Position numbers and translations under genes: made by a program. Shown here one piece after another: positions 7,527 to 62,609 of a stretch of DNA of 64,000 bases. Numbering within the stretch: the stretch's first letter is position 1; the number at the start of each line of letters is the position of its first letter. This DNA is from Isurus oxyrinchus (taxonomy: Eukaryota). The stretch lies in NCBI GenBank assembly GCA_026770705.1, contig JANJGN010000126.1, positions 496,001 to 560,000 on the forward strand. Direction: 5' to 3'. The notes beneath the pieces were generated by a model. That model saw only the letters and a program-made list of their open reading frames with translations. It had not been told where the DNA came from and did no database searches.

Positions 7527-8434
7527 TCATTTAAATAATTTAACAATCAAACTCAATGGATATTTCAAGCCATTCTTTAACTTCTGTCTGAATTTACTCT
7601 GGGTACCTGCACAAATAAACAGGTTGATGCAGGACCTTAAAAGCTGCAGCATAAGTCTGCATTCCTCCTGTATAACATTTGATTGATTGAAATTCGAGCC
7701 ATCGAAATAACTAACGCTGGCAATTCGTGCACAAAGGAAAGTTATAAGAGCAAGGAAATATAACAGGATGAAACTTGCCGAGATGGCAAAGAGTAAAACG
7801 ATGGACTTTCTCCTCTTCTCCATCTCTGGGTCACTTTGTTTCTCGCTCTTGCTGTGGGCTCGGAGTCTTCTGCGGGCTCGACTGGCCACAACAATGTGCC
7901 TGACCGTCAGAACATTGAGCAGCAAAATAAGAACGAATGAGAGACAAGGGGTTAAAACGGCATTTATGCTGTCATATACCACCCATCCGGGTGATGAATA
8001 TAATATTGGCTTTAGTTTGCAGTACCAGGGTGTATTGTCTGTGATAACAGAAGGTTCACAAGCAAAGTACAAGGGTATTTTTTTAGCACAATGCACAACG
8101 CAGACAGTTCCTATGACCACAGCTGCCGATTTCTTGGTGCAATATTTGGTTTTCAGCTTCTGGTAACAAATGGCTACAAATCGATCAAAGGTGAAAGCAA
8201 CTGTCACCCAGACAGAAGAATCCCTGACGCCATATATGAACACAACACTGAGAGCAAAGGCCGGAGTGATGGAAAGGAAACTGAATGGGAAATATGTACC
8301 TACAATCCGGTTTAAAATCACAGCAAGGATCATGATCAGGAGATCCGTCACGGCCAACGACATCAGGTAGTACATGATACATCCAGTGAGACCGCATCTT
8401 CCTCGAGACAGGATCACAATTACTGCCAAATTAG
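7527..8434 (-). CDS. GPCR gene A exon 2: GPR139/GPR142-like class A 7TM receptor (intact; 325 aa with exon 1)
   Basis: Acceptor ctgtcaaAG at 8436-8435, phase 1; open frame ANLAVIVILSRGRCGL..LAVTDLL..AFTFDRFVAIC..PWYC..LTP..DPEMEKRRKSIVLLF..NLFICAGTQSKFR to TGA; 70+908 nt = 326 codons. Confidence 0.9.
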
Positions 8435-9815
8435 CTTTGACAGAGGAATATAACCAGTAAATTTGCGTTGTGGACAAATGAATATAGAACAGAAAATATT
8501 GAGAAACTCACAGATACAGCGTCGGTCATGAAAAGAGAGCAATGTTCCCATTTCAGTCCTATGAATTATGTGCTGTAATGGAGAAAAAAAGACTCATTCC
8601 AAAATGCAGCAAATTATCAATACTGTGCTGCTGATTTACAGGAAGAATGCGGGCTTGGCCCTATAGTGAATATTCAAATTGCAGAATTGTTACTCAGTTA
8701 AATGAAAAACGATCAAGTATCCTCTTGCTTGCTGTTTAGAGAAGAACAGGCTAGAACATTGGAAAACAGAAGGGACACAATGTTAAATCGACCTAGGAAT
8801 TTGACAGAAACTCAGTAGATGGCTTTGAATGGAATTAAATACAAAGTGTTGCTGCTGTGGGCATAATCCAGCAAATGAAAACAACTAAAATGTAAAAAAC
8901 AAACTCCTTTGGATGGAAATAAAGAGTAACTAGAACTCCTGAGTTATGATGACGTGCAGCGAACACAACTGTCCTTCACAGCAGGGAGGAAATCCACACA
9001 CAGTTAAAGGTTCAATTGCTGCTAAGTTGAAAGTCGTCTAGCTTTGGAGTCAAAATATCCTGGATTCAAGACCAACTTCAGCTCCCTGAGAATTCTTCAC
9101 CGCCCAGGGTGCCAGGTTTCTGCTAAGACAATAAACTCTGGGCCAGTCATTTAATATTCTGCACAGATTTATCAGATAAATACTGTTCATATTCCAGCGA
9201 TAGGTGAAAGGGAAATGAATGAGATAATACAGATACAGTTCCTCTGTAATAATTCACACACGGTGAGAATGCCACTGACACAACAGAAAAACATTTTCTC
9301 AGTGGTAACAGCGTTATACATCACCCTTTTTAAAAACACCAAGCATAAAATAAAATAACATCTGAAATCTCGAACGGTGGAGGTAAACAGATGAAAGTGT
9401 CCAATTAAACTGACTAAATATTACTAGCTCAGGCAAGATAGTGCATTGTTACTGCTGAACTATTATTCTGGCGTTGGGGAGAAATTATGGTCAAGGGAAG
9501 AAATGACACGGAAAAACTTGAGCGACTCGACATGTGATGACGACTCATCATGTCAGTAAATGAGCTGTGTTGCTAAAACGGAGAATTAAATTAAACATTT
9601 CCCTTGAAGTGGAAAAAAGTGTCATTGTCGAGAGTGATAAAGTGGGAAGATGTCGCGTAATGTTGATAAATTGTTCTCTTTAATGGGAGAAAGAATATAG
9701 TACCATGCAGAAGCCAAGCTCCTAAATACGAACAACGATTCACTAAAATGAAAGCAAACCAAAGAGAAGGGATTAAACAATGATTTCAATAACATAGCAA
9801 ACCAAAATACTTAAC

Positions 9816-9885
9816 CTGGAATCCCGATCGCTGCAAGGACGGGATAGTATATGATGAAAATCAGACATTTTGGCAATCCATGCAT
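9816..9885 (-). CDS. GPCR gene A exon 1 (MHGLPKCLIFIIYYPVLAAIGIP)
   Basis: 70-nt exon, ATG at 9885, donor CCAG|GTTAAG, phase 1 matching exon 2; YYPVLAAIGIP resembles the TM1 start of GPR139-like receptors; 1381-nt intron. Confidence 0.88.
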
Positions 9886-9935
9886 TTCTGTCACCAGCTG
9901 CGAGTGTGTTCTGCACCACAGCTAAAGACAGTCAC

Positions 9936-9971
9936 ATATATATCTCAGGCCAGCCTCCAGGGAGACAATTA
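9936..9971 (-). promoter_or_regulatory. Gene A core promoter: homeodomain site, O/E(EBF)-like site, TATA
   Basis: Minus strand TAATTG-tc-TCCCTGGAGG-11 nt-TATATAT, about 50 nt above the ATG; conserved in paralogs. Confidence 0.6.
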
Positions 9972-10109
9972 GACGCTTTGATCTTTTGCAATAATTACGG
10001 TAATTGAAATAAAGATGCTCATGCTGCAGCTGTCAGGAAATTGTTTTTATTTTGACAGAGTAGAAACCTCTTCAAGGTCACTGACATTGTTCTGACGGAA
10101 CATCCTCAC

Positions 10110-10330
10110 AAAGTGCCCTTCTGTTTTCCACATTAACACAAACCTACATTGCTGTTTTGTTCTCATCAGCCCTTTACCACAACCGTTTCCCGCCGCTATA
10201 GTGAAAACAAGAACTCTTCCATTGCTCCCTGTTCCCCAACTTCGATGTAAAGTCATGGATCTGAACCTTTTACCGTTTTCTCTCCACAGATGCTGAATGG
10301 TCTATTGCGTATTTCCAGCATTTTCTGTCT
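10110..10330 (+). mobile_element. Penelope-like terminal repeat remnant
   Basis: 'tctctccacagatgctg..atttccagcattttctg' matches the elements at 48665 and 51980. Confidence 0.6.
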
Positions 10331-10930: not shown

Positions 10931-10949
10931 AAAAAATGTCCACTAAAGT

Positions 10950-20260: not shown

Positions 20261-20714
20261 TCGTACCTTGGTTCCTTCTGATACTTATTAGGAATTCGTT
20301 ATTACCCATACCATATTTCCTGTCATTAGATTGGTTTCATTATTATAGTGGTTTAAGGTTTCATAACGTTATTATTTACTTATTTTAAATGAATAAATGC
20401 GTTGAGATTTTATATGTATTTTTATGCCATTTTCAGGTTGTCCTTTTGTCAATTTAATACGTTAGTGAAGATCAATTCCTTTTACTTCTAGATTAAATAA
20501 AATTTACAGGAATCGGAAAGTAAGTGCTTTGTGTCATTTTATATTCCGACTTCCACTTTATCTGGGACAATATAAACAAAAAATGGACCAGCATTTATAC
20601 ATTGGTAAACAAATCAGTTCCAGCGTTGAATAAAATATTGATGGTCCATGTGCCACACCATTCTCCCGCCAAACGGATGTTGTAGCTGGGAGATTCAGCA
20701 CTAATGCTTCCCTA

Positions 20715-20747
<33 letters not shown>

Positions 20748-20756
20748 AGCTTAGAG

Positions 20757-20912
20757 CTAACTTTCTGACTACCGTGAAACGTTCCCGAAGAAGATGTGGT
20801 CTTTCTAAATACTCAGTGTCCATGGCGGTGATAGATCTCCTTGTTATTTTCATTACACTGGTATTGAGCTGGTTTACGGCTATTTATTTTACAGTCATTT
20901 TCTGAATCACTC
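20757..20912 (+). pseudogene. GPCR fragment F (truncated exon 2, TM1-ECL1)
   Basis: (CT)n..AG|CT AAC TTT CTG..SRRRCGLSK..SMAVIDLLVI..AIYF, then breaks at the duplication junction. Confidence 0.8.
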
Positions 20913-22663
20913 AAAATACGAAACAGAAACATTCTGAATCTGAATTCATTGTATTCTACGTATTTTTTTTCCGGAATTAGGTCTTTTCCATCTTTTTTTT
21001 AACTGTGAAGCCTTGAGGGTCAGATGTCTACTGTTTAGCTTCTCCGGATGTTTGGCTGCAACAGCAAAGAATTAAAGATTGCTTTATGTGTTCCCGCGAT
21101 TTCTGTGTCTTGTGTTCAAGGACTTTTTGGCAATGATACAAATGCTGCACAATGTAGCTTAATTGTTACTTCAATAATGTCATTAACACCTGAATTTCTT
21201 AGTTAAACAGGTCGTTTACTTTACATGCCTAGATATTAATTTACATTGATATCGAATTAAATTTAAATAGCGATGGCTGTGGTGTGTACAAAGCTCATGT
21301 AATTTGTTGATGGATAATGTGAATTCATTTCAATTGACAGGGGATGACAGTTGATTCGCAAGATTTGTATTTGGGTCTCAGCTTTTCACCGCATTTAGAA
21401 GGTTCGAAATGAAGCAATAGTAAGTTTCGTATCCAAATTGCTGCCGAAAATAAGCCATGTGGCACAGTAACTATTTTAGATAAGAAGAGGACATTGCGAA
21501 GGGTTGTTGTTGGATAACTGAATGAGCAAACTGTGGAAGAAGGAATATAATTTGTGGGAGGGAGATTTTTTTTGTGGCGCTTTGAGCTCAACCATTACAG
21601 ATCAGCATATTTTCTAATTGGCGCGAAACTATAAATGATAGTGGTATGTATTTATCCGTATTTCTGTTTACCCTCCACATGTTTATTCGTAAATTTATCA
21701 AATAGTTGCAATCGATGAACAGTTACCAAGACTTTTTTTTAACTCTGTTGCTAATGTTAGTTGCTCCATTCAGTTCTCCTAAGATGCATTTTGTTGTCAA
21801 GGCTGTGTAATACTCATCGGAGCCAGTATTTATTATTCTCACAGCCACTTTATTTCGGGGATCTAAATTTTGAAATATCAGTGTTCAAGCCCTGGGTTTG
21901 AGCCCTACTCCCGATCGCGAGTCCCTAATCTAGCTGCATACTCCTGAGGAAGGACAGCACTATCTGCTCTGTCGCTCTTTTGATGAGACTCTAAACGGAG
22001 GTATTTCTGCTTCTTCAATTAAAAATCTTCACTAATAATACGAGACCTAATCTCCCACTACAGCAATCATTGAGCTGCAAAAAAAAAAAACCGCTGATGC
22101 TCTTTGACCCGTTTCCACAGGAACTAAACCCGAATTGAATCAACGGCATTCATTCAACTTTATTTTCCGTCGTCCCGTGGTTCCCTCATTTATTTCTTAG
22201 GAATGAGTTATTTTTCATCTCTTATTTCCTGTCATTCTATTGCTTTAAGTATTATAGCGGTTTAACATTTCATAACGTTATTATTTACCGGATTTTAAAC
22301 GACTAAATATATTGATTTATTATCTGTACGTTATGCCATCTTCAGGCTGCCCTTTTGTCAATTTAATACGTTAGTCTTGTTCAATTCCTGCTACCTCTAG
22401 ATTGCATAAACTTTACAAGAATCAGAAAATAAGTGTTTTGTGTTATTTCATGTTCCAACTTCCAATGTATTTGGGACAATATTAATAAAAAAAATCGCAC
22501 TACATTATTAAATTAATCAGTTCCAGCGTTGAATCAAGTATTCATGATACAAATTCCATACCATTCTCCCCCCAAACTGCAGGTGTAGCTGAGGGTTTCA
22601 GCACTAATTCTGTTCTTCTCACTCTCCTCTTTCTCTCTCTCTCTCTCTCTCTCTGCCTTACAG

Positions 22664-23835: not shown

Positions 23836-23930
23836 ATCCCCTGGTACTTTGCCTATGAGCCTTCCTTTATCATTAACAATAGACATGGATTTTGTCATGG
23901 AAAATCACAATAAATAAAATCTCTCCGGCC
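23836..23930 (+). pseudogene. GPCR fragment G (ECL2 only)
   Basis: Reads IPWYFAYEPSFIINNRHGFCHGKS, homologous to IPLYFMCEPAFIIDNIPWQCNTKS of gene B. Confidence 0.65.
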
Positions 23931-26520: not shown

Positions 26521-26784
26521 GATCAAGAGTGAGAACTTTGTAATGTCTTCCTGCGGGGTTTAAAGCCATGGATGCTCATGCACAGTGCTCACTTTCACAA
26601 TTACAATGGCTTATTTGGCTTGTTATTTAAATTTTAGGAAAAAATGCAACTTGGGCCGTACTCTCCTATCTGATTATTTCAATTTGGAGCCGCGCCATTG
26701 CCCTTGAAAACAGATTCTATTCCATCAAAAACATAAATGCGAGCGCGGCAGCAGCTGCACTAAAATGTTTTTTTTCAGTTAGTG

Positions 26785-26845
26785 TAATTAATGTAAAAGG
26801 CCAAACCTTCCCCTTGTCTCCCTAGAGGCCGACATCATGTATAAA
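26785..26845 (+). promoter_or_regulatory. Gene B core promoter: O/E-like site and TATA (adjacent homeodomain site mutated; TAATTA upstream)
   Basis: TAATTA 26785-26790; cccttg-tc-TCCCTAGAGG (26819-26828)-11 nt-TATAAA (26840). Confidence 0.6.
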
Positions 26846-26896
26846 TGTAACAGTCTTTCGGTGTAGCACAGAGCACACTCGGAGCTTATGAGAGAA

Positions 26897-29130
26897 ATGC
26901 ATGGGATACCAGAAGGTGTGGTGTTTGCCATTTACTATCCTGTTCTTGCAGCTATCGGTATTCCAGGTAAAGTATTAGGGTTAGTTACCAGTTACCAGAA
27001 TCATTTTTCTATCACTTCTTTAATTTAGCTGTACTGCTTCTCTATAGTTCACCCCATTAACAGGATAATTTGTTATTTATAATGTTTTCCCTTTTTTGCA
27101 GTATCCTTATCTCTACGTTTAGTGCATTCTTCTTTTAAATGATATTAAGCCTTCCCTTTCCTCGCAATATTACTGCTCATTACTGGTCTATTTTCTCCAC
27201 TTTAAGGGTATCATTTCTCCCCTTCACGAGAATAGTTTCTTCCCATTGCCAGTATACTTACTTCCATTTCAGGGATTACTATGTTTGCTTCACCAATGCC
27301 TTTTCATCTCTTTAATTAAAAATGTTCTCCCACTTAGCAGTGCAGCCTCTCAGTCTAAATGTAATTAGATGTTGTTATTGTCATTATTAATGTGGGCGAA
27401 GTATTTAGCACACTAATATCACAGTGCAATGTAGATCAATTGTATTATTGGCACTGTCACCATGGATGATTTATTACGCTGTAAATGTAGCTCTATTGTG
27501 TTATTTTCACAGCTATTGAATTACCTCATTTTGCCATGTGCATATATTGCTCCTTGCGCTGGAATGTGACTAACAGCTATTTCTTAAGTTAGATTTTGTA
27601 TTCACGAGTTATTGGACCGGTCCTCATTCTTTTGTTTTCACTGAAATATAGCATATCGGGCAGTGCAACATTGCTGAAGTTCAACAGTTGGGCTTGAATG
27701 CTAAACCTTTTGAATCAAAAGTGAGATTGCTACAAACTAAGCCACACCTGATCCATAGTAAGCATGATCAGCTTTACTCGTGGCTGTGAAGCCTTGTTCT
27801 TTTAACTTCGAATTGTTGCAGCTAAGATGCATCAGATCTCCTTCATCTTTTTAGTTAAGTACTAGCTTTTCTTTTGCTGAACTTTTTTCAAGCTCTGTAA
27901 AGTATTTGTTAACCTTCGATTTTCCAATGTTTCAGAGTATTCTTATATTTTCTCGTCTCTAAACATTAAATGAGAACAACACTGATTGTATTTCAGAGTC
28001 ACAATCCAGGATGTTCAATGTTCACCTTGGGTGAGCCCTTAGTGTTGTTGACAGTACAGAACAGATTGCTGTGTTTTAGGATATTTTCCTCTAGATCATT
28101 TCTCTGACATGCTAACTTGTTCCTCTCTTTTCAACTGCTGCTTGAATGAGAATTTCCACCATTTTATGTTCTAAATTTCTTTCTCAACATCTGCTATTCG
28201 CTGGCTGCGTTCCGCTGTCACAGCTAATCTGGCAGTGATTCTGATACTGACTCGAGAAAGATACGGTCTCTCCAAATGTATCACTTACTACCTGATGTCC
28301 ATGGCCGTGACGGATCTCCTTGTCGGGATCACAGCTGTGTTATTAAACCAGGTTATAGGTATTTATTTCCCATTCAGTCTCTTGTCCATCACGCCGGTCT
28401 TCAGCCTCAGACTTGTGCTAATTTATTGTGTCATCGATTTGTCTGTGTAACAGGGGCTTTCACCTTTGACCGATTTGTAGCCATTTGCTGCCAGAAGCTG
28501 AAAACTAACTATTGCACAGAGAAAATGGTGGCTGCGGTGATAGGAACTGTCTGTGTACTGAACTGTGTTAAAAGCATCCCCTTGTATTTTATGTGTGAGC
28601 CTGCCTTTATTATTGACAATATACCCTGGCAATGCAACACAAAATCAATATTATATACATCACCTGCATGGGTCACTTATGAAAGCATAATCGCCGTGTT
28701 AACCCTCTGCCTCTCCTTCGTTCTTATTTTAATGTCCAATGCTCTGACCAACGGACACATTGTAGTGGCCAGTCGAGCCCGCAAGAGACTCCGGATCCAG
28801 ATCAGTGCAGAGAATCAAAGTGACCCAGAGATGCAGAAGAGAAGGAAGTCCATCGTTTTGCTCTTCTGTATCTCGGGCAGTTTCATCCTGTTATATTTGT
28901 TAAGATTTATAAACTTCCTCTATGTCCGAATTGCGAATCTTAGCTATGTGGACTCTACCAATTTCAATGAATCAAATTTTCTTATGGAGGAAAGCGCACG
29001 TATGCTTCAGCTCCTGAGTTCCTGCGTCAATCCGTTTATTTATGCAGGGACCCAGAGTAAATTCAGAGAAGAGTTAAAGAATGGTGTGAAATTCCCACTG
29101 AATCTGCTTGTTAAATTATTTAAAAGATGA
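26897..29130 (+). pseudogene. GPCR gene B, GPR139/142-like, with a single 4-nt frameshift (exons 26897-26966 and 28224-29130)
   Basis: Exon 1 MHGIPEGVVFAIYYPVLAAIGIP, G|GTAAAG; acceptor cacAG|CT; relative to gene A, CTGG is missing at ~28446 (TCT GT^GTA ACA); the rest is open with DRF and NPFIY. Confidence 0.88.
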
Positions 29131-42905: not shown

Positions 42906-45719
42906 CCCTTCTACCTTTATCAACGTGGCTAACAGGACAGCAGGAAATGAAATCGGCTGAAGATTTATAAATGATAAATGAAGATAATGTCCTTATGCAG
43001 TTTTATAACTTTTTAAAAAATGATTTTGTTGGTCATTTTTGGGGCCCCTTTAGAGATGGGACTCTTCCCAATTGGCCAACGGAAAGTGCAGAAGATGAAT
43101 TGATGGTCTTTTGCCATCGCAATCCCACAGTCCGCTGTTTATATATTTAGGGGCTCAGGTGTTTGCTGTAAAGCGGTGCTTAGTCAGTGGAGAACAATTC
43201 CTGAGGAAAGTATGTGCATCCATTTCGAAGCGTATCCAACCATCAAGATCAGAATCATTACTGGGGCGGGACGCGGGGAGATTGTAGTGCTTTATCCACA
43301 TTTCATGTTGGAATGTGTAAGAAATCAGAGATACGACACTTAGCCGTCCACATGAACGTAGAGCTACTACGAGGACTACAAGGACCCTGGATTCTGATGG
43401 GAATAAGACAGACCACAGAAAATATGGGGAAGAGAACATTTAACTACCAGAGAACAGATACTGACACTTAATTGTGCTCGGATGTATTGCGCCTTTAACA
43501 GTCTTATTTTCAAACTGAGTGACTGTTAACTAGAATGGAAAACAATGCGTGGCATCGACAAGAAGGGGAAAGGATGGAATCTTGTGTACAGTTGAAGTTG
43601 GATTCTGCTGTCCTTATCGTCCAAATAATTTAACAATTTCAAGTAGTGGATATTTCACCCCATTCTTTAACACCTCTCTGAATTTACTCTGGTCCCTGCG
43701 TAAATAAACAGGTTTGCGCAGGAACTCAAAAACTGAAGCATGTATGCTTTTTCCTCAAGAATGAATGTTGAAAGATTGATTTCAGAGCTTGATAAGTATT
43801 TAACATTTCCAATTTGCACATAGAGGAAAGTTATAAAAAGTAACAAATATAAGAGGATGAAACTTCCCGATACACAGAAGAGTAAAATGATGGACATTGT
43901 CCGCTTCTCCATCTCAGGGTCACGCTGATTGTCTCCATTTCTCCGGGTCTGGAGTCTCCTGCGAGCTCTACTGGCTGCGAGAATGTGTCTGACTGTCAGG
44001 ACATTGAGCAGTAAAATCAGAATGAATGGGAGACAAGGGGTTAAAATGTGATGAATACAGTCATAGGCGATCCATGCAAGTGAGGTATAAAATATCACTT
44101 TTACATCGCAGAACCAGGGCACATTGTCAATTATGTACAAAGATTCGTATATAAAATACTGGAAGGTGTTTTTGACACAGCTGATTGCGCAGATTGTCCC
44201 TATAACCCGTGCCGCCGTTTTTTTGGAACAACATTTTACTTTCAGCTTCTGGTAACAAATGGCCACAAATCGATCAAAGGTGAAAGCTGTCGTTAACCAG
44301 GCAGAGCTGTCTATGGCTGTATATATTAGGGCTTCACGGAGACTGCATACTGGTGTGATTGACAGGAAACTGAGTGGGAAATAAATACCAGCAGTCCGGT
44401 TCAATATCACAGTGGTTATAATGAGCGGGAGATCTCACACCGCCAGGGATTGTAAATAATAGGTTATACAGGTGGAGATACCGCATTTCACTCGAGAAAG
44501 GATCACAATCACCGCCAGGTTAGCTGCAATAAAGAGAGAGAGAGAAAGAGAGAAGTTGGAAAGAGACTGAGTTTGTGTGTGTGTGAGTTTGGGAGAGAAC
44601 GAATACAGGAAGGTTACTGCTCAAACTATAAACAAATCAACAGTTGTATAGGATTCTGCATGAATTTGTATATTTCAGATGTGTTCCCCAGTTGCGAAAT
44701 TGTAATGGGCAAGTGATTCAGCTTTGTAAATTGAAATCTTAATTCAATATAGGTCAGGTCAAAGTTATATGAATGTCAAATATTTTAATAAAAACTAATG
44801 GAGAACAAAAGACATCGTTAACACTGAGAAACCAACCTAGAATTTCTGTATAAGCAAGAAGAAAGTGTACGCATCTGCAAGGCATTGCAGGAAATAATGA
44901 CGAAGGTAAGTAACAAAACAAGCAACAAGAAGTGTGGAAACTAACAAGGGCGCAGATTATATCTCACGGAAGATCAATATAGTTCCTTTCCTATACAATA
45001 ATTGGCAATAATTATTGAAAATTATTCGTTGTTGTGAACTTTGGGAATTAAACCTGCTCAAAAATATCGACATACAGCGAGAAGTAAAGGGGCAATGAAT
45101 GATTTCTGATCTTCCAGACAGGGCGTTTGCCTGCATGTGAAGATACATCCTAGCTCCTCACATATAGTCAACTGGAAGATCGGTGTCGATCTGAACCTTT
45201 GGAAAAGTCTCCTTCCAAGTGAGGTCCCTCTTGCAATGCAGCACTGACTCCGTACTGCATTGCACTTTCCGGGATCAACTATCAACGTTGTCCTGTAATG
45301 GATATTTCAAATCAAAGCATTGCGCCTGAGATGTGAAAGATGCAGCCAAGTAGGGAGCCTCATTCAATATGAACAAACAGCAGAGACGGGAAAATGTGGG
45401 ACATTTCCCGGTGATATCAGCAGAAGGAAATTCCGGCGTCAACAGTGGTCAAGTCGAAGCGTCAGCAGCAGTTCAAGAACCAATTAGTGTTGGAGACTGA
45501 GAGCAGAAACACACCTCTGTGATCGTGGTGCTAATATAGAATATTCATCAAAAGTCTATTATTACATTGTTCATACATCTGTCAAAAACTGGGTGCTCAT
45601 GATGTCCTTCCAACAAATTCATTGGGGGAATATTGAATGTTACATTGCTCTCTATCAATGAAACATTCGTGGGAATTGTTCGATCATTGTCAATGTGATC
45701 AACACAACAGATTTACATT

Positions 45720-46140: not shown

Positions 46141-46169
46141 GTACTAAATGGTGCAAAACACCGTTGAAG

Positions 46170-46570
46170 ACGGTAATATAATACCACTTACAACGAAAAA
46201 TTACACCCTTATAAGGGGGATATTATACCGCTAACAACGAGAAATTTCACCCTGAACAGGGTAATATTTTACCATTAACAGCGAGAAATTGCACACTTTG
46301 CAGAGTATGATAGCACTTAAATTGTGAAATTTTGTTTTTAACAAGGTTATATTATGCCACTAACAGCGAAGAATTGCACCTTTAATAGCATATTATTAAG
46401 CCATTAGCGGCGAGAATTTTAGGCAAAGGGAACAAATTATATTGTCAAAATTGAGACATTATACCTATAAAGTGGGGAAAATGTTCTTTTAGAGGGGTAA
46501 AATATACTTGTTAAAAGAGGGAAATTGCTCCATTAATGGGGAGAATTGTACAGATAAAGGGCGGAATGGG
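46170..46570. repeat. 44-bp (2x22) minisatellite near the gene C splice donor
   Basis: tacc..taaca.cga anchors at 46182, 46226 and 46270. Confidence 0.75.
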
Positions 46571-46789
46571 AGAATGGTTATAACGTTATGGATATACAAT
46601 GCTTTTAAAAGGTAGAATTCCTGCAGGTAACCGATTTCCGTATCAAAATACTAATTACAATACTTTACCTGGAACCCCGAGAGCTGCAAGGACTGGATAA
46701 TAAATGGCAGACAGAAGGTCTTTTGGTGATCCGTGCATTTTCAACAAATGTTCTGAAAGCCTTCTGCACATCACTGAAAGATTGTCACA

Positions 46790-46824
46790 TTTATAACTGA
46801 TGTGAAGCGCCAGGGAGTTAATTA
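46790..46824 (-). promoter_or_regulatory. Gene C core promoter: homeodomain site, O/E-like site, TATA
   Basis: Minus strand TAATTA-ac-TCCCTGGCGC-11 nt-TATAAA. Confidence 0.6.
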
Positions 46825-47619
46825 GGTGGTTTGATCTCTTGCATTAAATACATTAATTTTCAATAATAACAGTTCAGCCCAGCTGCTTCAGGACTGACGG
46901 TTATGTTTTGGGAGAATAAAAGGTTTTTTTTTTCAATGGAGTTGACACCCAGAGATTGCAGCATGATCACAATTTCTTTTCTCAGAAAAAGATACCGACC
47001 TGGATTTTGTGGTCAGGGGTGAATGAGAGGCCTTTGGCCCTGATTGCTCTGGAGAATCCCAATTTGACTGGTTCACTGGCTGCCGCCAGAATTTAAGCCT
47101 TTGGCTGATGCATGGTCCATGGACAAAATGATCTGTGAAATGTAGCATCGGGGTGACTTCTGACGACGGCCGCCCCTGCTGACGTCACGAGCCTGATACA
47201 AGTTCCCTGCGGTCCCTTTTCAGGCCAAAGGCAGATGGGTGTTTTGTTATGATTTAAAACACTTCTACGGACTTTAAAAATTTTCAAATTTTTCTAACAC
47301 TTTCATATACTTGAAAAGCCTTTTAAGCACTAAGTGAGTGCTGCACAAGTGAATGCACGCTGTGGTAGAAAATGCCCCGATGCAAGAATTTTCAAACAGG
47401 ACAGGAAATGTGACACAGGCTGCAGGATTGTCATGTGATATTCGATGTTCACATGCTTGTCTAATGTTATAAGTTGCAACGCGAGATTTTAAAGCAGCCT
47501 CAAGATAATTGTACACTTACTGCTTTGGAAATTATGCACTGCATCACCTTACTGCAATTCTCTCATGAATTCGGCCACGCTGCCTCTGGCTTTTCGTTTC
47601 ATAGACTTCTGTTTTCAAC

Positions 47620-55330: not shown

Positions 55331-56959
55331 GGCAATGTGTTCACTGTGTATATCAGTGCTTGGAAGAGTATAGTGGCCCCCAATATTAAAGGCGATCATT
55401 AGATCTCACAGAAAATGAGATCATGTTTTGGAATATTCCAGCTGAACGTCGGATCCTGTGGGTAATTTATAATTTACAAAGGATTTACTAACCACTCCTC
55501 GCTGCTGTTAGTATTCCTGGTGAGTGATTATTTTAGAAATGTATTTTACAAAACATCTTTCACTGTGTTTGCTGTCCTTGTGCTTTATACGAGCTAATTA
55601 ATTTATTCTTTGGTATTTTTGCGTCGTGTGGCATGTAATTCCCTACGTTTCTGTCAAGTAGCATTTCACCAGTTGTCGATTCCCTGTTCGCTGTTCCATG
55701 GACCGTTTTTATATCTCACGACTTGCTTCAATTGATTTTTTTCTGCATAATTTGGCTGGTTGAATATTTTACGCAATAAATATTAGCGATGAATTATAAA
55801 TATTGAACAGCTGCAGTCTGCTCTCTGAACTGAAACCCAATATCACAGACGAAATATATTTTGCAGGTATTGGTTTTGCGGTCTGATGGAGGTTGTAATT
55901 TGCACTGATCTGTGGCAATCAGAGCAGGCAGGAACAAGAGAGAATCTCCAAGAATGATTCAGCTCCAAGCAACTTGTATTCCACCATTTCCCGCTTTGCC
56001 TAACAGTCACAAAATCTATATTTTTAGGACAGGGTATAAAATGTAATAATTGTTCAACAATACTTGCTCCCCTCACCAACAATTGGCTCCGTTCCCATTT
56101 CTGTCAACAGACCTAATTTCCTTCCCTTGTCTCTGCATTACTTTATTCAGAGCTGTAAGTCATTATCCCCCTCCCACAGGTTTTTATTTTCAAAATATGT
56201 TCTTGGGACATGGATGCTTGTGACAAAGTTCCATTTATTACCCAGCCAGAGGTGAGCTGAGAAGTTGTTGCTGGGTCTTCTTGCTGAGCTGAACTATTCC
56301 CTCTGCTGACGGTGCTCCTACCTGGTATTACGGAATTCCAGAACTCTGATGAAGGGAGAGGTTATTGGTCCAAGTCAGGATGGTGCGTTAGAGAAGGTGA
56401 ATCTTGCGGCATTGCACACCTTCTGCTTGTTGCTGTGCTGGTACGTGCTGTCGAAGTAGGCCGGGTGTTTTGTTGTTGTTGATTATGTAGAGATTCTCCC
56501 TGCATCCACAAAGGTGGAAGCGGTGAAATATCGAGTTTAATGATGAACGGTCACTGATGGAAAATCTATTCCATTTTTGAAGGTGATTCTGCTTATTGTG
56601 TGTTGATTTGATACCCATTCCGATGAGTAGTGAGCATTCCATCATTTTTCATGCGTGAGATTTCAAAGCTTTTGTTTGGTTTGGTGGGAGGCGTGCTGTG
56701 GGTGTTGGGCTGGGGGGTGGCTGCTAGTGGGGACTAGTTCAGCGCACTCCCACCAAACTGCTGAACACCGAACTTCTTCAACATGTTCCTCAGTTGCTGA
56801 TACAGTTAATAGTTCCATCTGCTTAGCCACTGTTCTTCTCCTGCTCCAATCTGTAGCCATCACCTCTGCTCTTGTAAATAAACAACCCCTGATGCCTCAG
56901 TCCTTGTAAGCAAACACTCCATCTCTAAGCTCTCTTTCCTCTGCAAATTCCTTGTCCCT

Positions 56960-57160
56960 GCTGCTACCCCCCACGTTTCTGCGCCACCTTCCAGGGACAC
57001 CATGCTTAAATCCTTCTAACCATTTTTCTCCCTTATTACAACTCTTACACCGTCCTTAGTAAAGGCACAAATTCTATCTTATGTGACTATGCTAATGTCA
57101 AAACCCCTCTCCTTCCTCTTCTCGACATGTCTGCAGCCTTTGGCATGGGTGGCCACAGTG
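56960..57160 (+). mobile_element. L2 RT fragment
   Basis: Degenerate LVK.TN.ILCD..LL.LLDMSAAF..V.H motif. Confidence 0.6.
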
Positions 57161-58254
57161 AAATATTAAGACTTTCATGTTCTGAATTACCTCCTAAATC
57201 TGTTGTCCTCGCTACAAACGTATCATCCTTTAAGATAATTCTTAACATGTGTTCTTTTTTGTTATTCCCCCTTCGCCAGCCTTCTTTGACCTGGTCTCCA
57301 TTTCCCTTTTGTGTAATTTCCCTCTATCTGAAGCTGGTGTCTGCAGTTCATTGCGGTGAATTTGATTCTGATTGCATCATTAACCTGGATCGCCCGATGC
57401 CAACAGTGGTAAATATTGAAATATCTGCCGCTCTGCACATCAGGACCAATCGGAAATCTTGATCCAGGAGCATACATGGTAATTATCTGCGAACTTTAAA
57501 CTTCTGATGGGCATAGCTGTACTACCCGGGCCCCTCTAACAATGACCCCAAAACTGACGTCAGTTTTGGACTCTTGTGCCTGCTGTGTGACACATGCTTG
57601 CCCTAGAATTTTCCCGGTGTTAATTTCTAGCATGTGTCAGTGAATAACTGTGGGGCGCAGCCCATGCACGCCCAACCCCCATGCACAGACCTCCCACATT
57701 CAACCCACACAAAAAAAACCACATCACCCCCCAACTACTGACCCCAGAATGCGCAATCTGACCCGATTGCCTTCCCCTCGACCCACTTGCACACCTCTCA
57801 CTAGCCATCGCCCATCCATTCGCTCCCAACCGACTGCAAAGCACGTTAACTACTCGCCCATCCCCAAAACAACTACTAACCACCCCGACATCGTCGCACC
57901 TCATGCACACCTCATCTCCCCCACCCCACTACGTGGGCAAGAAAAACAAGCTGCAAGGGTGGAAAAAAATAGGGCTTTAATTATATTTACAATCAGTGCT
58001 GATCATCCGAGTATCACCACCAAATGGGAGGCCAGGACCATTAACTTTATGAATTATCTTTCATGTTAATTTACACACACATCACTGTCCTGTGTTAATA
58101 TTGCACAATAATCTTTAGTTTCCCTGAGATAGTAACACACACGAGTGGCATTCTATCCTCATCCAGCGTTTCAACAGGTGAGACACCAGTAAATAATTGT
58201 AAATTTTCATAACTTGAGTGCTCAGGTACACAGACTAGAGAAAGCTAACATGCA

Positions 58255-59470
58255 ATATATTTTATTATTATCCAATCATGTGAAATGGGCTTCGTTGGCT
58301 GGACCAACATTTATTACATATCACTAGTTGCCCTTGAAAAGGCGGTGGTGATCTGCCTTCTTGAACTGCTACAGTCCATGTGGTGTATGTGCACACAAAG
58401 TGCTGTTCGGAAGGGATTTCCAGGATTTTGGCCCAGCGATAGTGAAGGAATGGCGATATAATTCCAAGTCAGGAAGGCGAGTGATTTGGAGGGGAACACC
58501 AATCTGGCGGTGTTCACATCTGTCTGCTGATTGTGTCCTTCTAGATGGCAGTGGTCAGGGTTTGAAATGTGCAGCCGAAGGAGCCTTGGTGATTTCCTGC
58601 AGTTCATCTTGTAGATGGTACACACTGTTGCGACTGTGCGATGGTGGTGGAAGGAGTGAATGTTTTTGGGTGTGCTGCCAATCCAACGATTGCCCTGAAT
58701 TGTGTCAAGCTTCTTGAGTGCTTTGGATGCTGCACCCATTCAATCTAGCGAGGAGCATTCCACCACACTCCTGACTTGTGCCTTGCAGATGGTGGACAGG
58801 CTGTGGAAAATCAGGAGGTGAGTTATGCATCGCACTATTCCTAGCCTCTGACCTGCTCATGTAGCCATAGTATTTAGATGGGTCGTTCACTTCCGTTTCT
58901 GGTCAATGGTAAACCCCAGGGTTTGATACTGGGGATTCATTGATGGGAATGCCATTGAATGACAAAGGGCGATGATTGGGTTCTCCTTTGTTGGAGATGG
59001 ACATTGCCCGACAATTGAGCGGTGTACAAATTACTTGCCACTTGTCCGTGCAAGCTTTTGTATTGTCCAGGTCTTGCTGCATTTGGGCATGGGCTGCTTC
59101 AGTACCTGAGGAGTCGTTAATGTTACTTAACATTGTGCAGTCATCAGCGAACATCCACTTCTGACCATATGATGGAAGGAAGGTCATTGATGAAGCAGCT
59201 GAACATGATGGACCGAGAACACTACCCTAAAGAAAACCTACAGTGAATTGCTAGAACTGAGATGACAGACCTCCGACAACCACAACCATCTCCCGTTGTG
59301 CTAGGTGTGGTTAGAAGCAGCAGATATTTCCCCCCTGATTCCCATTGACTCGCGGTTTGCTAGGGCCCCTTGATGCTACACTCTGCCAAATGCTGCCTTA
59401 ATGTCAAGGGCAGGCACTCTCATCTCCCCTCGGGAGTTCAGCTCTTTTGTCCATGTTTGAAACAAAGCTG
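58255..59470 (-). mobile_element. L2-like LINE (RT to 3' end) in the gene D intron
   Basis: MFADDCT..QQDLDN..DKWQV; KKLDTIQ..HSFHHHRTVATVCTIYKMNC. Confidence 0.88.
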
Positions 59471-59489
59471 TAATGAGGATAGGATACAA

Positions 59490-60075
59490 TATTGCAGCAA
59501 GTGATTAGGATAATAAATGGCAGTGATCCCTGTCTTCGAGTAAGGAACCTGTTCATAGAATTATGCATGTGATTGTTGAGAAACGATATGGATTAATGTT
59601 TACAGTTTCGGCCTCCTTGCCTACTGAACAATATACGTATCTAATCAATCAATCAATCAATCAATTTAGACGTGCATTTTCTTTAAGTTAGAGGATGGGT
59701 GATTATCTCATCGAGTCATAGAAAATTATTTGGTCTCCTCATTGGGTAAACGCTGAGAGAATGTTTTCCTTAGCTGGGGAGTCTAGAACTCGAGCCCATA
59801 GCCTGAGAATAAGCTGTTGGCCATTTAGGATTGAGATGGGGAGAATCTTGTTCTCTCAGAAAGTGGAGAATCTTTGGCATTATCAAATCTATACGGCTGT
59901 TGGTTTCGATACAGTCAAGAAAGTGGTCGACAGATCTTTGGGCTCTAAGGCCATCAATGTAAATGAGGACAGTGTTGAAAAGTAGAGGTCGAAAAAAGAC
60001 CATAGGCTTAGTCCACATTAGACTTGGCCGTAGGGAACAATTGGCTTGCTCTTGCTCCTAGTTCCTGCATTCCTA
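59490..60075 (+). mobile_element. CR1 3' fragment containing (AATC)n
   Basis: MFSLAGESRTRAHSLRI..FSQKVENLW. Confidence 0.75.
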
Positions 60076-62609
60076 TGTAACAACCACAAATCCCAACCAC
60101 TGGCCCATTTAGTTCCTGGTCCAAAACACGCACATCCGATCCATTGGTAAAATCTGTCCTGCTTACCAACCTGAATTTGGGATGCTGTCACTCTCTGCTG
60201 CTCCTTTCTGTTGGCCAGTATCCAGTTCTGATTCAATCTCTAATTTATTTTCTTCACTTTAGCGATCCATTTACCTAACCTGTTCGTTTGTTCTTTTCGA
60301 GAGTGTGTGTGTTACTGGGATACAGTCTCAGGGTTCATTGTGGCTTTTGGGAGAGCAATAATTATCAGGAAGACACATTCGGATATCCTGATTTGAAAGA
60401 CAATTTATGAATGAATTCAAATCTGTATTTACTTCTTTACACAGCCTTATTATTCCACTCAGCTGTCTTGTCAAATAAAAAATGAACCATTTTCCTTCAG
60501 TACAAATCATAGCCCATCCTATAAATGATTTTCCAATGTTCGTGCGTGCAGTTTGGAGCATGTTCATGGGATATTGAGCAGGACTAGTAATGGGGTGAGT
60601 GATTTTCACTCCGAACCCCATGAGTAAGGTCAGGAAATGATGCTGGGACCTGCTGCTGCATTTGGTTTCCTGTTACAACAGGATGGTGTTTAACTTGAAA
60701 CCCGCCCTCCAGCGGAAAGTTCAAACACTGGTATAGCAATTAGATTCTGACCTTGGATAACTCTTCAAATTTCAGTCTGCAAAAGTTGCTCTAAGTTAAT
60801 CAATAAATTTCCTGTCTTTCTCTTCCTTACAGTGAACTTACTGACTATTGTGACCCGGTCTCGGGGAAGGTGCGGTCTGTCAAAAAGTGTTTCCCGTTAC
60901 CTGGTGTCCATGGCAACTGCGGATCTACTCGTCGTTATCCTTGATCTCATATTCAGGCAAATTGCTATTCGTTACTGGGCTCAGTTTCAGTTCATATGGA
61001 GGATTACAGTGTGTAATATCCATGCAGTCCTGCTTTATGCAGCCACAGATTGTTCTGTCTGGTTCACAGATTCTTTCCCCTTGGATAGATTTCTGGATAA
61101 TTATTCCCACAAGTTGAAAACAAATTATTGCACCGAGCATACGGCGGCTGTGGTTCTCAGAACAGTCAGTCTGCTGTTCTGTGTGGAAAGCACTTGCTGG
61201 TACTTTATGTATGAAGGTCAGTATGCAATTTCCAACGCTCCTTGGTTTTGCACATTAGTGACTGGTGCTGATCTTTCGTCAATGTGGGCAGCAATCGAAT
61301 TTTTTCATTATATTTTAACTCTATTTGCACCATTTGTTTTTATTTTGGTGTTGAATGCTTTAACTGTCAGATATATTTTAGTGTCGAGCAGAGGCCGCAG
61401 GAGACTCTGGGTTCACTGCAGTGGGGAGAATGCCAGTGACCCAGAGATGGAGAAACGCAGGAAATCCATCATTTTACTGTTTCCTAGATCGGGGAATTTT
61501 ATCCTGTTGTGGGCAATCTTTATGATCTATTCTGCTTGTAATAGGCTATATTAGTTAGATGCTATTCCTGAAAATCTTCCTAAATTTGTGCACGAACTGG
61601 GGTTTATGTTTCAGCTCCTGAGTTGTTGCACCAACACGGCTATTTATGCAGTGACCTAGACTCAATTCAGAAAGGAGCTGAAGAATGTCGTGAAATATCC
61701 CTTTTCTGTAATTGTTAAATTTATTAAACAGTGAGAAGAATTTCCATTTTCAATATGAGTTTAACCTGTTTGTTTCCCAATCTCTTCATCTCGGTGATGA
61801 GCACAGGGTGAGGCTGGTTTCCATCTTTCACCGCCAGGATTCAGTGACTAACAGAAACGCTGCATTTGGGAAGTAATTTACCTCAGTCCTGTTTGTCCTG
61901 CTGGTTTTCCGTCTGTTGCAACTGTCCGGTTCGCCTTGGGACTGGTTTGTGAAATTCCCACCCACCAGGCTCGAGTTTCATGTCATTGCACAAAGGGGGC
62001 TTTGAGGACAAGGTCAATCGGGCAGGTTACAGTCCAGGGGCGGACATGCAGCATTGTCTCCACTATCCCAGGGAAACCTTGTTCAAAACATTTCGGACTA
62101 ACCTGCAGATGGCAGGGTGGTTTTCAGAGGTTCAAAGGTCAGTGATTTCAGCTTTTCAAAATCTTTCTGTGATTTTATTCCAGTATTTATTCCAGTCCCA
62201 GAACCTCAGAGTGGGGAGTCTCCTCGTTTCAAGTAAAGGTTTATTTCCACTGCACAAGTTATGTCTCAGTGAAATTCGTCAATTTAAATGTCCCCCTGAA
62301 CACATCCGGAAAAAGTATGTTCAGGAGAGGAGAGTTAGGGGGGGGGGGGGGGGGGGTGGAATGTGCTCAGAACTGAAATAAAAAAGTGAAATGTGGGAAT
62401 AATCAGCAGCCCTCGCTACCTTTGTGTAGAGAGAAACAGACTAAAGCTTTAAGGGCTTCCATCAGTGTTGTGACACCCTTAGGTGATGCAAAGGCTTCCT
62501 CCTTCTGCAGCAGTAACTGAAGCATGTCATTTCAAAGTGTGGGGTGTGGGGTGAGGGGGGCTGGCGGGCTAAGTGGGAGTTTATTTTGGTGGGGGTGGCG
62601 GTGGCGGGG

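What the first reader, a model, noticed from the sequence alone, without database searches (positions are those of the whole stretch)
7527..61734. Expanded birth-and-death cluster of GPR139/142-like receptors: candidate chemosensory GPCR repertoire in a cartilaginous fish
Seen: seven paralogous loci in 54 kb (1 intact, 3 full-structure pseudogenes, 1 decayed exon, 2 fragments) on both strands. The four copies with both exons share one layout: a tiny exon 1, a phase-1 intron inside TM1, and one ~900-nt exon. A, B and C also have very short N-termini. Established: mammalian GPR139 and GPR142 are single-copy sensors of aromatic amino acids; sharks have few canonical ORs; tandem arrays with many pseudogenes typify OR, TAAR and VR families. 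Inference: this may be a lineage-specific multigene sensory family, possibly detecting amino acids or amines, rather than ordinary GPR139 orthologs.
Basis: partly seen in the sequence, partly recalled or inferred. Interest (0 to 1): 0.88.

Follow-up and report, generated by a model that had tools for sequence, protein, structure and literature searches.

The report
Decaying shark orphan-receptor gene cluster
This stretch of shark-type DNA holds seven copies, mostly broken, of a receptor gene family that has multiplied to a very large number of genes in sharks, rays and chimaeras but stays single-copy in amphibians, which makes it an untested candidate for a smell or taste receptor family.

Summary
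Six loci are robust and a seventh is marginal. They are gene A (open frame), three two-exon pseudogenes (B, C, E), one badly decayed exon and two fragments. A, B, C and E share a short exon 1, a phase-1 intron in TM1 and a ~900-nt exon.

The genes are not GPR139/142 orthologues. Gene A scores only 26 bits against human GPR139. It lacks the Arg6x51 that a structure paper calls unique to GPR139/142, and no family member examined has Asp3.32.

The family forms a chondrichthyan clade (sharks, skates/rays, chimaera). It has 1915 database proteins at E<=1e-5, and 81 of the best 120 come from one shark. Its sister is a single-copy amphibian/sturgeon gene.

Paralogues vary mainly on the extracellular side. 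Pairwise dN/dS is 0.30-0.41.

New caveat: the "intact" gene A has N-L-F-I-C in place of NPxxY and Ser at P5.50, so this cluster may hold no working receptor.

A chemosensory role is plausible but untested. No RNA run was found, and I found no paper describing the family.

This scan had already noted the family on other DNA of this genome (142 notes).

The parts
7527..8434 (-). Gene A exon 2 (908 nt with stop; 301 full codons). The frame is open, but it has NLFIC in place of NPxxY and Ser at P5.50.
   Evidence: Pfam 7tm_1 63.3 bits
8435..9815 (-). Gene A intron (1381 nt, phase 1, GT..AG). It cannot be aligned to the B intron by blastn.
9816..9885 (-). Gene A exon 1 coding part (70 nt: MHGLPKCLIFIIYYPVLAAIGIP + G).
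9886..10013 (-). Gene A short 5' leader and conserved promoter block (TAATTA-type sites, TCTCCCTGGAGG, TATA-like box). It aligns to the B and C upstream regions.
20753..20902 (+). Fragment covering the end of TM1 to TM2 (aa 23-76 of the family profile), then truncated.
   Evidence: 36.6 bits
22645..23555 (+). Decayed main exon, split over three frames with several stops.
23836..23907 (+). Marginal 24-aa fragment (ECL2 motif YEPSFIINN). Its score is at noise level.
   Evidence: 14.7 bits against a 15.0-bit antisense artefact
26769..26966 (+). B promoter block and exon 1 (coding 26897-26966, intact).
28224..29130 (+). B exon 2 (907 nt) with one frameshift near 28441-28447.
43614..44523 (-). C exon 2 with a TGA at 44435-44437 and a frameshift near 43691.
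46669..46858 (-). C exon 1 (46669-46738, intact) and promoter block.
55423..55519 (+). E exon 1 (97 nt) with an in-frame TAA at 55489 and a phase-1 GTGAGT donor.
60833..61734 (+). E exon 2 (902 nt) with TAG stops at 61552 and 61657. It belongs to a separate old subfamily.

Best explanation
The window holds a decaying tandem sub-cluster of a very large class-A (rhodopsin-type) orphan GPCR family. The family expanded within cartilaginous fishes from a gene that remains single-copy in amphibians and sturgeon.

The family evolves by tandem duplication, divergence and loss (birth-and-death). The copies here are old paralogues: dS is 0.55 between A and B and 0.84-1.40 for the other pairs. They were under moderate purifying selection for most of their history. 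B, C, E and the decayed exon then died.

Gene A still has an open frame but has lost the Tyr of NPxxY and two helix prolines. It is probably weakened or recently dead.

Across the family, the intracellular face is conserved: ICL1, the DRF motif, the cytoplasmic ends of TM5 and TM6, and N-P/T-x-x-Y. The pocket and the extracellular loops vary.

Inference: the family is a set of receptors that signal through one shared transducer but recognise many different ligands. A chemosensory use (nose, taste or solitary chemosensory cells) is the most likely single role; I give it about 0.4. Nothing here shows it.

The confidence of 0.75 below is for the evolutionary and anatomical statement.
For: - Seven loci and a shared gene layout.
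- 7tm_1 matches of 41-63 bits against a cut-off of 30.5.
- 1915 proteins at E<=1e-5 among 6007 candidates. All 120 listed are chondrichthyan, and by my hand count 81 of the 120 are from Heterodontus francisci, on at least 5 different contigs.
- 99 representatives at 50% identity reach E<=1e-30.
- Of 22 representatives with 36% identity or more whose names I looked up, 21 are sharks, skates/rays or the chimaera Callorhinchus; one has no name.
- Tree of 60 rows: all 45 chondrichthyan rows, including A, B, C and E, lie on one side of a branch (SH-aLRT 92). The sister is an amphibian/sturgeon clade (100*), and the two together have 100*. A+B are sisters (95*). E sits in a separate 100* clade that includes a skate.
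- A search with the amphibian gene gives 20 amphibian proteins, each from a different species, 1 sturgeon protein, then shark-family members at 32-33% identity.
- dN/dS is 0.30-0.41.
- Column entropy is 1.74 bits on the extracellular side against 1.06 bits on the intracellular side, p=4e-12.
- Gene A: Cys at 7.53 (Tyr in 77 of 79 members), Leu at 7.50 (Pro or Thr in 77 of 79), Ser at 5.50 (Pro in 76 of 79).
- Gene A departs at 7 of 61 highly conserved columns. For 91 annotated members the median is 0 and the maximum 5.
- A related species has Pro at the 7.50 codon.
- The promoter and exon 1 of A, B and C align at 59-77% identity, while the A and B introns do not align.
Against: - There is no expression or ligand data of any kind.
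- The support for chondrichthyan monophyly is 92, not starred, and comes from a quick search.
- The conserved-column reference set is dominated by one species, so some of gene A's departures may be subfamily traits. C136F, P242S (P5.50S) and the column-336 departure are shared with B.
- GPR139 itself lacks P7.50 (sequence seen), so L7.50 alone need not be disabling.
- Greater extracellular variability is seen in most GPCR families.
- In the catshark, V2Rs are expressed in the nose and all olfactory neurons carry the microvillous markers TRPC2 and Go (abstract and section headings of PMC10116579). So there is no unexplained neuron population that calls for a new family.
- The top 50 olfactory-enriched catshark genes held no GPCR (passage in PMC11979771).
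- B's single frameshift rests on the assembly alone.
Confidence: 0.75

Rival explanations
1. The family is a non-chemosensory expansion. It would be used in immune cells, somatosensory neurons, skin or gut, in the way MRGPR, formyl-peptide or chemokine receptor families expanded in other vertebrates (comparison recalled). It might read host or microbial peptides.
For: - The model has an ECL2 beta-hairpin, and its best fold matches are peptide and chemokine-type receptors: GPR15, MCHR1, NTSR1, ghrelin receptor, CCKAR.
- After GPR139, the next profile matches are CCR1, CCKAR, NTSR1 and PrRPR.
- Catshark olfaction is already accounted for by V2Rs (abstract of PMC10116579).
- Another reader noted immunoglobulin-type cassettes between the genes (I did not check this).
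Against: - The copy number and pseudogene turnover are at the high end for such families.
- The very short N-terminus argues against binding large protein ligands (inference).
- No expression data favour any tissue.
Confidence: 0.3
2. Every copy in this window is dead, gene A included. The window would be a gene graveyard at the edge of the family, not a working cluster.
For: - Gene A has Cys at Y7.53 and Leu at P7.50, both arisen after the A/B split, since B keeps P and Y.
- Gene A departs at 7 of 61 highly conserved columns, against 6 for the pseudogenes B and C and a maximum of 5 in 91 annotated members.
- A's end branch (0.24) is as long as those of B (0.25) and C (0.29), against 0.03-0.1 for several annotated genes.
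- At all five codons with a listed non-synonymous difference from related species (six base changes), the relatives carry the commonest family residue and the window carries the odd one.
- One related sample has a 10-nt deletion in the orthologue.
Against: - The 325-codon frame is fully open, with intact splice sites, start codon and promoter block.
- In the few long contig pieces listed, the exon is about half as diverged from relatives as the flanks: about 3% against 2-8%.
- The list of differences was cut (318 more not shown).
Confidence: 0.4
3. These are ordinary GPR139 or GPR142 genes: brain or gut sensors of aromatic amino acids, merely duplicated locally.
For: - NCBI names most family members "probable GPR139".
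- GPR139 is the best solved-structure match, at 76.5 bits for the family profile.
Against: - Gene A alone scores 26 bits against GPR139, close to its scores for OR52 (23.5) and 5-HT2B (22.8).
- A separate conserved single-copy clade, with its own shark orthologue at 66% identity to the coelacanth protein, lies nearer to GPR139 (70 bits) than the expanded family does.
- Arg6x51 is absent.
- The family has an estimated hundreds of copies, where GPR139 is described as highly conserved (abstracts).
Confidence: 0.02

Closest known systems
Human GPR139 (PDB 7VUG/9M42) and its close homologue GPR142
   Same: Both are class-A GPCRs. GPR139 is the best solved-structure match of the family profile: 76.5 bits against 58.7 for the next, CCR1. 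Both have a D-R-aromatic motif. The aromatic residue at 3.33 is kept (Y or F in 59 of 79 members). W6.48 is present in 44 of 79.
   Different: - Only 26 bits for gene A alone.
- No Arg6x51: Ala in gene A, Arg in 2 of 79 members.
- The acidic residues at 2x61, 3x29 and 3x32 are missing in gene A (N, V, I), and no member has an acidic residue at 3x32.
- Residue 7x38 is Y or F rather than Asn in 56 of 79 members.
- Many copies with many pseudogenes, against a conserved gene.
- Not the same clade.
Unnamed single-copy amphibian/sturgeon gene, also labelled "probable GPR139" by NCBI (P0226 Pleurodeles, P0419 Ascaphus, P0422 Xenopus, P0438 Acipenser)
   Same: It is the sister clade of the chondrichthyan family (100* for the pair). 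It is 32-33% identical to shark members, with scores of 135-166 bits.
   Different: The 20 listed amphibian proteins each come from a different species and are 66-74% identical to the Pleurodeles query, so the gene is conserved and not expanded. Its function is not known to me.
Conserved gnathostome orphan represented by Latimeria XP_005988539 (P0222), with shark, sturgeon, amphibian, teleost, turtle and squamate orthologues
   Same: About 32% identity to gene A (122 bits). It serves as the outgroup of the pair above. It links the family to GPR139 (70 bits).
   Different: It appears to be single-copy and conserved. Sharks keep their own orthologue (P0301, 66% identical to the coelacanth protein), so the expanded family is a different and older lineage.
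Vertebrate chemoreceptor multigene families (OR, TAAR, V1R/ORA, T2R)
   Same: They share the mode of evolution: tandem arrays, many pseudogenes, lineage-specific copy number, nearly the whole coding sequence in one exon, and variability on the ligand side. The DRFVAIC stretch resembles the OR motif MAYDRYVAIC (recalled).
   Different: - Different sequence family: no OR appears among the best 60 profile matches.
- The intron inside TM1.
- No Asp3.32, so not TAAR-like.
- Expression in sensory neurons is not shown.

Membership tests
Class A (rhodopsin-type) GPCR, Pfam PF00001 | Match to 7tm_1 above the gathering score | tested here: met
   A 63.3, B 45.2, C 55.0 and E 41.4 bits, against a cut-off of 30.5
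Class A (rhodopsin-type) GPCR, Pfam PF00001 | Seven-helix fold | tested here: met
   The AlphaFold2 model of the gene A exon 2 product has pLDDT 86.5 and pTM 0.82, with helices TM2-TM7, H8 and the end of TM1. Foldseek gives at least 500 PDB matches at E<=0.001; all 50 listed are GPCRs.
Class A (rhodopsin-type) GPCR, Pfam PF00001 | Microswitches D2.50, D-R-Y type and NPxxY | tested here: inconclusive
   Family: D2.50 in 79 of 79, D-R in 79 of 79, N7.49 in 78 of 79, Y7.53 in 77 of 79. Gene A has D2.50 and DRF but N-L-F-I-C, so Y7.53 and P7.50 are lost.
GPR139/GPR142 subfamily | Arg at 6x51, described as found only in GPR139 and GPR142 and critical for activation (passages in PMC8807744) | tested here: not met
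   Gene A has Ala. Among 79 family members: F 27, Y 14, L 13, N 6, I 4, S 3, R 2, K 1 and others.
GPR139/GPR142 subfamily | Orthology, meaning the same clade and high identity | tested here: not met
   26 bits to human GPR139. A different conserved clade, which includes a shark orthologue, lies closer to GPR139. True GPR139/142 sequences could not be put in the tree, because no tool gave them as whole sequences.
GPR139/GPR142 subfamily | Activation by L-Trp and L-Phe | not testable with these tools
   This needs a cell assay. The residues that docking places near the amino acid are not kept in gene A: 6x51 is Ala, 2x61 Asn, 3x29 Val and 3x32 Ile.
Aminergic/TAAR-type amine receptors | Asp at 3.32 (criterion recalled) | tested here: not met
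   0 of 79 members have D at 3.32. The counts are I 21, N 19, L 8, S 6, T 5 and others.
Chemoreceptor-type multigene family (by mode of evolution, not by sequence) | Large lineage-specific copy number | tested here: met
   1915 proteins at E<=1e-5. 81 of the best 120 are from one species (hand count). 99 representatives reach E<=1e-30.
Chemoreceptor-type multigene family (by mode of evolution, not by sequence) | Tandem arrays with a high share of pseudogenes | tested here: met
   In this window 1 of 5 full-size copies has an open frame, and there are 2 further fragments.
Chemoreceptor-type multigene family (by mode of evolution, not by sequence) | Variability concentrated on the ligand-facing side | tested here: met
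   1.74 against 1.06 bits, p=4e-12. Pocket columns 3.29, 3.32, 3.36, 5x43, 6.51 and 7x38 are highly variable. This is a weak discriminator, because most GPCR families show the same pattern.
Chemoreceptor-type multigene family (by mode of evolution, not by sequence) | Expression in sparse subsets of chemosensory cells | not testable with these tools
   No RNA run holds the stretch.

The most novel reading that the evidence does not exclude
This family is a seventh, so far unrecognised, vertebrate chemoreceptor family. It would be the large class-A repertoire that cartilaginous fishes use in place of the ORs, TAARs and V1Rs they largely lack. Each gene would be expressed in a sparse subset of microvillous olfactory neurons or of taste or solitary chemosensory cells, driven by the conserved homeodomain/TATA promoter.
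Probability: 0.3. Interest if true: 0.9.

Novelty: new variant of a known kind. Interest (0 to 1): 0.6.

Why it matters
[quoted passage not shown] Genome papers speak of a paucity of GPCRs in them (passage in PMC8455134).

A class-A family with very many members, probably hundreds per genome, that public annotation labels "GPR139" contradicts that picture. I found no description of it in nine successful paper searches.

If it is sensory, it changes the account of how vertebrate chemoreception evolved. If it is not, it is still one of the largest lineage-specific GPCR expansions in vertebrates, and it needs a proper name and a function.

Automated "GPR139" labels in shark genomes should not be read as orthology. 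In this window, an open reading frame is not enough to call a member functional.

Tried and rejected
- **Expression.** The look-up of sequencing runs found no run holding half or more of the words, and no RNA holder. The best shares were 0.18-0.27 in DNA-type runs of two related organisms. Read laying therefore gave only short contigs of relatives. They show presence and a few differences, not expression. The difference list was cut (318 more not shown), so I made no real dN/dS estimate on the A branch.
- **Fold search.** The result is generic class A. GPR139 ranks only 9th and the top ranks are near-ties. It does not discriminate.
- **NCBIfam.** No match, as expected for a library of bacterial and archaeal families.
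- **ESM Atlas.** It gave only generic 7tm_1 clusters and two clusters named "probable GPR139".
- **Other long ORFs of the window.** Only one weak reverse-transcriptase piece, at 5305-5772. The other nine have no Pfam match.
- **E exon 1.** blastn and a regular expression missed it. tblastn with the N-termini of E-type homologues found it.
- **True GPR139/142 in the tree.** No tool gave me their whole sequences, so I used bit-score comparisons through the PDB chain instead.
- **Papers.** Searches, and passages in PMC11979771, PMC8455134, PMC10116579, PMC12294341 and PMC12208981, gave no description of the family. Supplements, such as the tissue-specific gene lists of PMC11979771, were closed and may hold expression values for catshark members.
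- **Rejected readings.**
  - Retrocopies: the intron is kept in all four two-exon copies.
  - OR or TAAR membership: see the membership tests.
  - Chance similarity: E-values down to 1e-146.

Full report
**What is there**

The window has no N. It holds four long GPCR-like frames, and all four match Pfam 7tm_1 above the cut-off.

Three searches give the same seven places and no others: tblastn with gene A, tblastn with a 325-aa shark homologue, and a family-profile HMM over 2819 six-frame pieces. The places are:
- A(-) at 7527-9885
- a fragment (+) at 20753-20902
- a decayed exon (+) at 22645-23555
- a 24-aa fragment (+) at 23836-23907
- B(+) at 26897-29130
- C(-) at 43614-46738
- E(+) at 55423-61734

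Scores run from 483 bits (A) to 36.6 bits (the first fragment). The second fragment, at 14.7 bits, scores no better than an antisense artefact over gene A (15.0 bits). I therefore count six robust loci and one marginal one.

**Gene layout**

I read the sequence directly and checked the coordinates by script.

| Copy | Exon 1 | Intron | Exon 2 |
|---|---|---|---|
| A | 70 nt | 1381 nt | 908 nt |
| B | 70 nt | 1257 nt | 907 nt |
| C | 70 nt | 2145 nt | 910 nt |
| E | 97 nt | 5313 nt | 902 nt |

- Exon 1 of A, B and C reads M-H-G-x-P...YYPVLAA-x-G-[IV]-P plus one base.
- All four have a GT donor in phase 1 and an AG acceptor.
- The first full codon of exon 2 is the Asn I take as N1.50, so the intron sits inside TM1.
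- Only about 5-8 residues precede the helix in A, B and C.

Lesions:
- B: one frameshift (net -4 nt) near 28441-28447.
- C: TGA at 44435-44437 and a frameshift near 43691.
- E: TAA at 55489, TAG at 61552 and TAG at 61657.
- The exon at 22.6 kb is broken many times.

Gene A is open throughout. blastn and a pattern search missed E's exon 1; I found it only with the N-termini of E-type homologues.

Everything below uses the 301-residue exon 2 product.

**Which family**

Gene A alone barely reaches human GPR139 in the PDB: 26.4 bits, E 4e-5. That is close to its scores for an OR52 construct (23.5 bits) and 5-HT2B (22.8 bits).

In the large protein collection it has 1915 relatives at E<=1e-5 among 6007 candidates. 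The best is only 70% identical. All 120 listed come from sharks or a ray. By my hand count 81 of these 120 come from Heterodontus francisci, on at least five different contigs. NCBI names most of them "probable GPR139". Others are named GPR15-like, capa-receptor-like, FMRFamide-receptor-like and so on, which shows that the names are automatic.

Against 1.84 billion representatives at 50% identity, there are 99 hits at E<=1e-30, 160 at E<=1e-10 and 577 at E<=0.001. I looked up the names of 30 representatives.
- Of the 22 that are 36% or more identical to gene A, 21 are chondrichthyan: sharks; the skates/rays Leucoraja, Rhinoraja and Hypanus; and the chimaera Callorhinchus. One has no name.
- At about 32% identity come a coelacanth protein, a salamander protein and a teleost protein.

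**Relation to bony vertebrates and to GPR139**

*The coelacanth-type gene.* The coelacanth protein P0222 scores 70 bits against human GPR139, far above its next match (NTSR1, 44 bits). That is still far too low for an orthologue. A search with it gave 145 proteins at E<=1e-10. They come from catshark (66% identity), zebra shark, sawshark, sturgeon, amphibians, many teleosts, turtles and squamates. So it is a conserved orphan gene, and sharks have their own copy of it.

*The amphibian-type gene.* A search with the salamander protein P0226 gave 25 proteins. Twenty are amphibian, each from a different species, at 66-74% identity to the query (the query itself included). One is from sturgeon (46%). 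The next four are shark or skate family members at 32-33%.

*The tree.* A tree of 60 rows (quick IQ-TREE), rooted on the coelacanth-type clade (100*), shows:
- The amphibian/sturgeon clade (100*) is sister to all 45 chondrichthyan rows.
- The 45 chondrichthyan rows lie on one side of a branch (SH-aLRT 92, not starred).
- The pair together has 100*.
- The chimaera sequence is nested inside the chondrichthyan rows.

*The family profile.* A profile of 80 sequences hits GPR139 best in the PDB, at 76.5 bits against 58.7 for CCR1.

GPR139 is thus the nearest characterised receptor. But the expanded family is two old splits away from it.

**The GPR139 pocket**

The structure paper (passages read in PMC8807744) makes three relevant points:
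- R244 at 6x51 occurs only in GPR139 and GPR142 and is critical for activation.
- In docking, the carboxylate of L-Trp or L-Phe contacts R244.
- The amine of the ligand faces D84 (2x61), E105 (3x29) and E108 (3x32).

Using the profile-to-chain alignment and motif anchors:
- Gene A has Ala, Asn, Val and Ile at those four places.
- Among 79 family members, 6x51 is F 27, Y 14, L 13, N 6, I 4, S 3, R 2, K 1 and others.
- Position 3.32 is never Asp.
- Position 3.33 stays aromatic in 59 of 79, and 6.48 is W in 44 and Y in 30.

So the sequence does not support the suggested amino-acid or amine ligands. The pocket positions are among the most variable columns.

**How the copies evolved**

- A and B are sisters (95*). 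C groups with two Heterodontus genes. E lies in a separate 100* clade with sawshark, zebra shark, horn shark and skate genes, so that split predates the shark-batoid divergence.
- Protein identities within the window are A/B 68%, A/C 62%, B/C 62% and 43-44% to E.
- Nei-Gojobori estimates give dS of 0.55 (A/B), 0.84-0.88 (to C) and 1.1-1.4 (to E), with dN/dS of 0.30-0.41. These are old duplicates, selected for most of their history and more loosely than a typical conserved GPCR (the last point is my own knowledge).
- The A and B introns share nothing that blastn can find. Yet about 120 nt upstream of the ATG plus exon 1 align at 69-77% (A/B) and 59-73% (A/C).
- The shared upstream blocks are TAATTA-type sites, TCTCCCTGGAGG and a TATA-like box about 45 nt before the ATG. 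E's upstream does not align. Another note of this scan (s1-901375) concerns this promoter. I did not test its "olfactory" reading.

**Is gene A functional?**

This is the main new point.
- In an alignment of 91 annotated members, gene A departs from the majority at 7 of 61 columns that are 97% or more conserved. The members themselves have median 0 and maximum 5. The pseudogenes B, C and E have 6, 6 and 13.
- In the more diverse alignment A2, gene A has Cys where 77 of 79 have Y7.53. It has Leu where 77 of 79 have Pro or Thr at 7.50. It has Ser where 76 of 79 have P5.50.
- B keeps P7.50 and Y7.53, so those two changes arose after the A/B split. S5.50 is shared with B.

The laid contigs come from two related organisms. 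They differ from the window by about 3% in the exon and 2-8% in the flanks, judged from the few long pieces listed.
- At 7621 one organism has the base that gives Pro at 7.50. The other organism agrees with the window.
- Eleven exon differences were listed. Five are synonymous and six are non-synonymous, the six lying in five codons.
- At all five of those codons the relatives carry the commonest family residue and the window carries the unusual one.
- One sample carries a 10-nt deletion at 7881 (251.6 of 289.7 depth). Another sample of the same organism does not.

Points on the other side:
- The list of differences was cut (318 more not shown).
- GPR139 itself has no P7.50.
- The frame, splice sites and promoter are intact.

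I put the chance that gene A no longer works at about 0.4.

**Function of the family**

Across A2, mean column entropy is 1.74 bits on the extracellular side (143 positions) against 1.06 bits on the intracellular side (156 positions), p=4e-12. Topology was taken from an AlphaFold2 model with pLDDT 86.5.

By region, ICL1 (0.51 bits) and ICL2 (0.91 bits) vary least, and the DRF motif, the cytoplasmic ends of TM5 and TM6 and the N-P/T-x-x-Y motif are nearly fixed. ECL2, ECL3 and the pocket columns vary most.

This fits many ligands and one shared transducer. It is the pattern of chemoreceptor families, but other expanded GPCR families show it too. The fold search is generic, with peptide and chemokine-type receptors at the top and GPR139 ranked 9th.

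No expression evidence could be obtained:
- No RNA run holds the stretch.
- One 474-nt contig in a small run only guessed to be RNA matches 82 nt of the exon at 87%, so it is a paralogue.
- Supplements were closed.

**Literature**

- GPR139 + shark: 4 papers, none relevant by title and abstract.
- "GPR139-like": 0 papers.
- Further searches turned up no description.
- Passages in the catshark "Sensory Shark" paper say that the top 50 olfactory-enriched genes held no GPCR.
- The whale shark paper speaks of a paucity of GPCRs in cartilaginous fishes.
- The abstract of PMC10116579 reports very few OR, TAAR and V1R genes and V2R expression in the catshark nose. Its abstract and section headings report that all olfactory neurons are TRPC2- and Go-positive.
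- In the passages found for the terms I searched, a 2025 GPR139 review says nothing about paralogues or duplication.

I therefore found no published account of the family. The sequences themselves are public and auto-annotated.

**Earlier notes of this scan**

The scan has 142 notes in this genome that mention GPR139. A follow-up on another piece (s1-864206) reached the same family-level reading. I used these as leads only. What this report adds:
- the two bony-vertebrate sister clades
- the failed GPR139/142 and amine tests
- the doubtful state of gene A
- the dN/dS and variability figures for this window

**Verdict**

It is a mostly dead sub-cluster of a very large, chondrichthyan-specific orphan class-A GPCR family. 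The chemosensory reading is the best single guess, at about 0.3-0.4, and it is untested. The specific amino-acid or amine suggestion is not supported by the pocket residues.

Noticed in passing
window 7990-8270 (gene A) and 28380-28650 (B): A and B both lack the conserved Cys at the top of TM3 (family ITPVC; A has ITPAF, B has ITPVF). Both have a new Cys in ECL2 (FACEP / FMCEP where the family has FIYEP). This suggests a moved disulfide in the A/B lineage. Another note of this scan (s1-901635) is about this.
   Followed up: partly
window 7881, run X6: One sample of a related organism carries a 10-nt deletion in the orthologue of gene A (251.6 of 289.7 depth). Another sample of the same organism shows none (0 of 278.4). 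It may be a segregating null allele, or a paralogue laid on the same place.
   Followed up: no
window 7700-8300: Contig depth of related species rises 10- to 30-fold over the most conserved parts of exon 2. 818 contigs of one run lie on 3.5 kb, and 444 of them are under 90% alike. This fits many paralogues in those genomes but is not a copy count.
   Followed up: no
window 8436-8460, 20700-20750, 22600-22660, 44530-44570: A (CT)n / (GA)n-type pyrimidine tract lies just upstream of the exon 2 acceptor in several copies. It reads as LSLSLSL in translation. It appears again in loose ends of paralogue contigs from a related species.
   Followed up: no
window 5305-5772 (-) and 62626-63033 (+): Reverse-transcriptase-like ORF pieces flank the cluster. 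The first matches RVT_1 at 25 bits, below Pfam's cut-off. The second has no Pfam match but reads like the same kind of element.
   Followed up: partly
I did not check it. The long ORFs I scanned in that range had no Pfam match.
   Followed up: no
E-type homologues P0144, P0149, P0158, P0160: Annotated members of the E subfamily are 404-475 aa long, with about 85-150 extra N-terminal residues that differ from one another. These are probably gene-model artefacts or extra upstream exons. E in this window shows only the 97-nt exon 1.
   Followed up: partly
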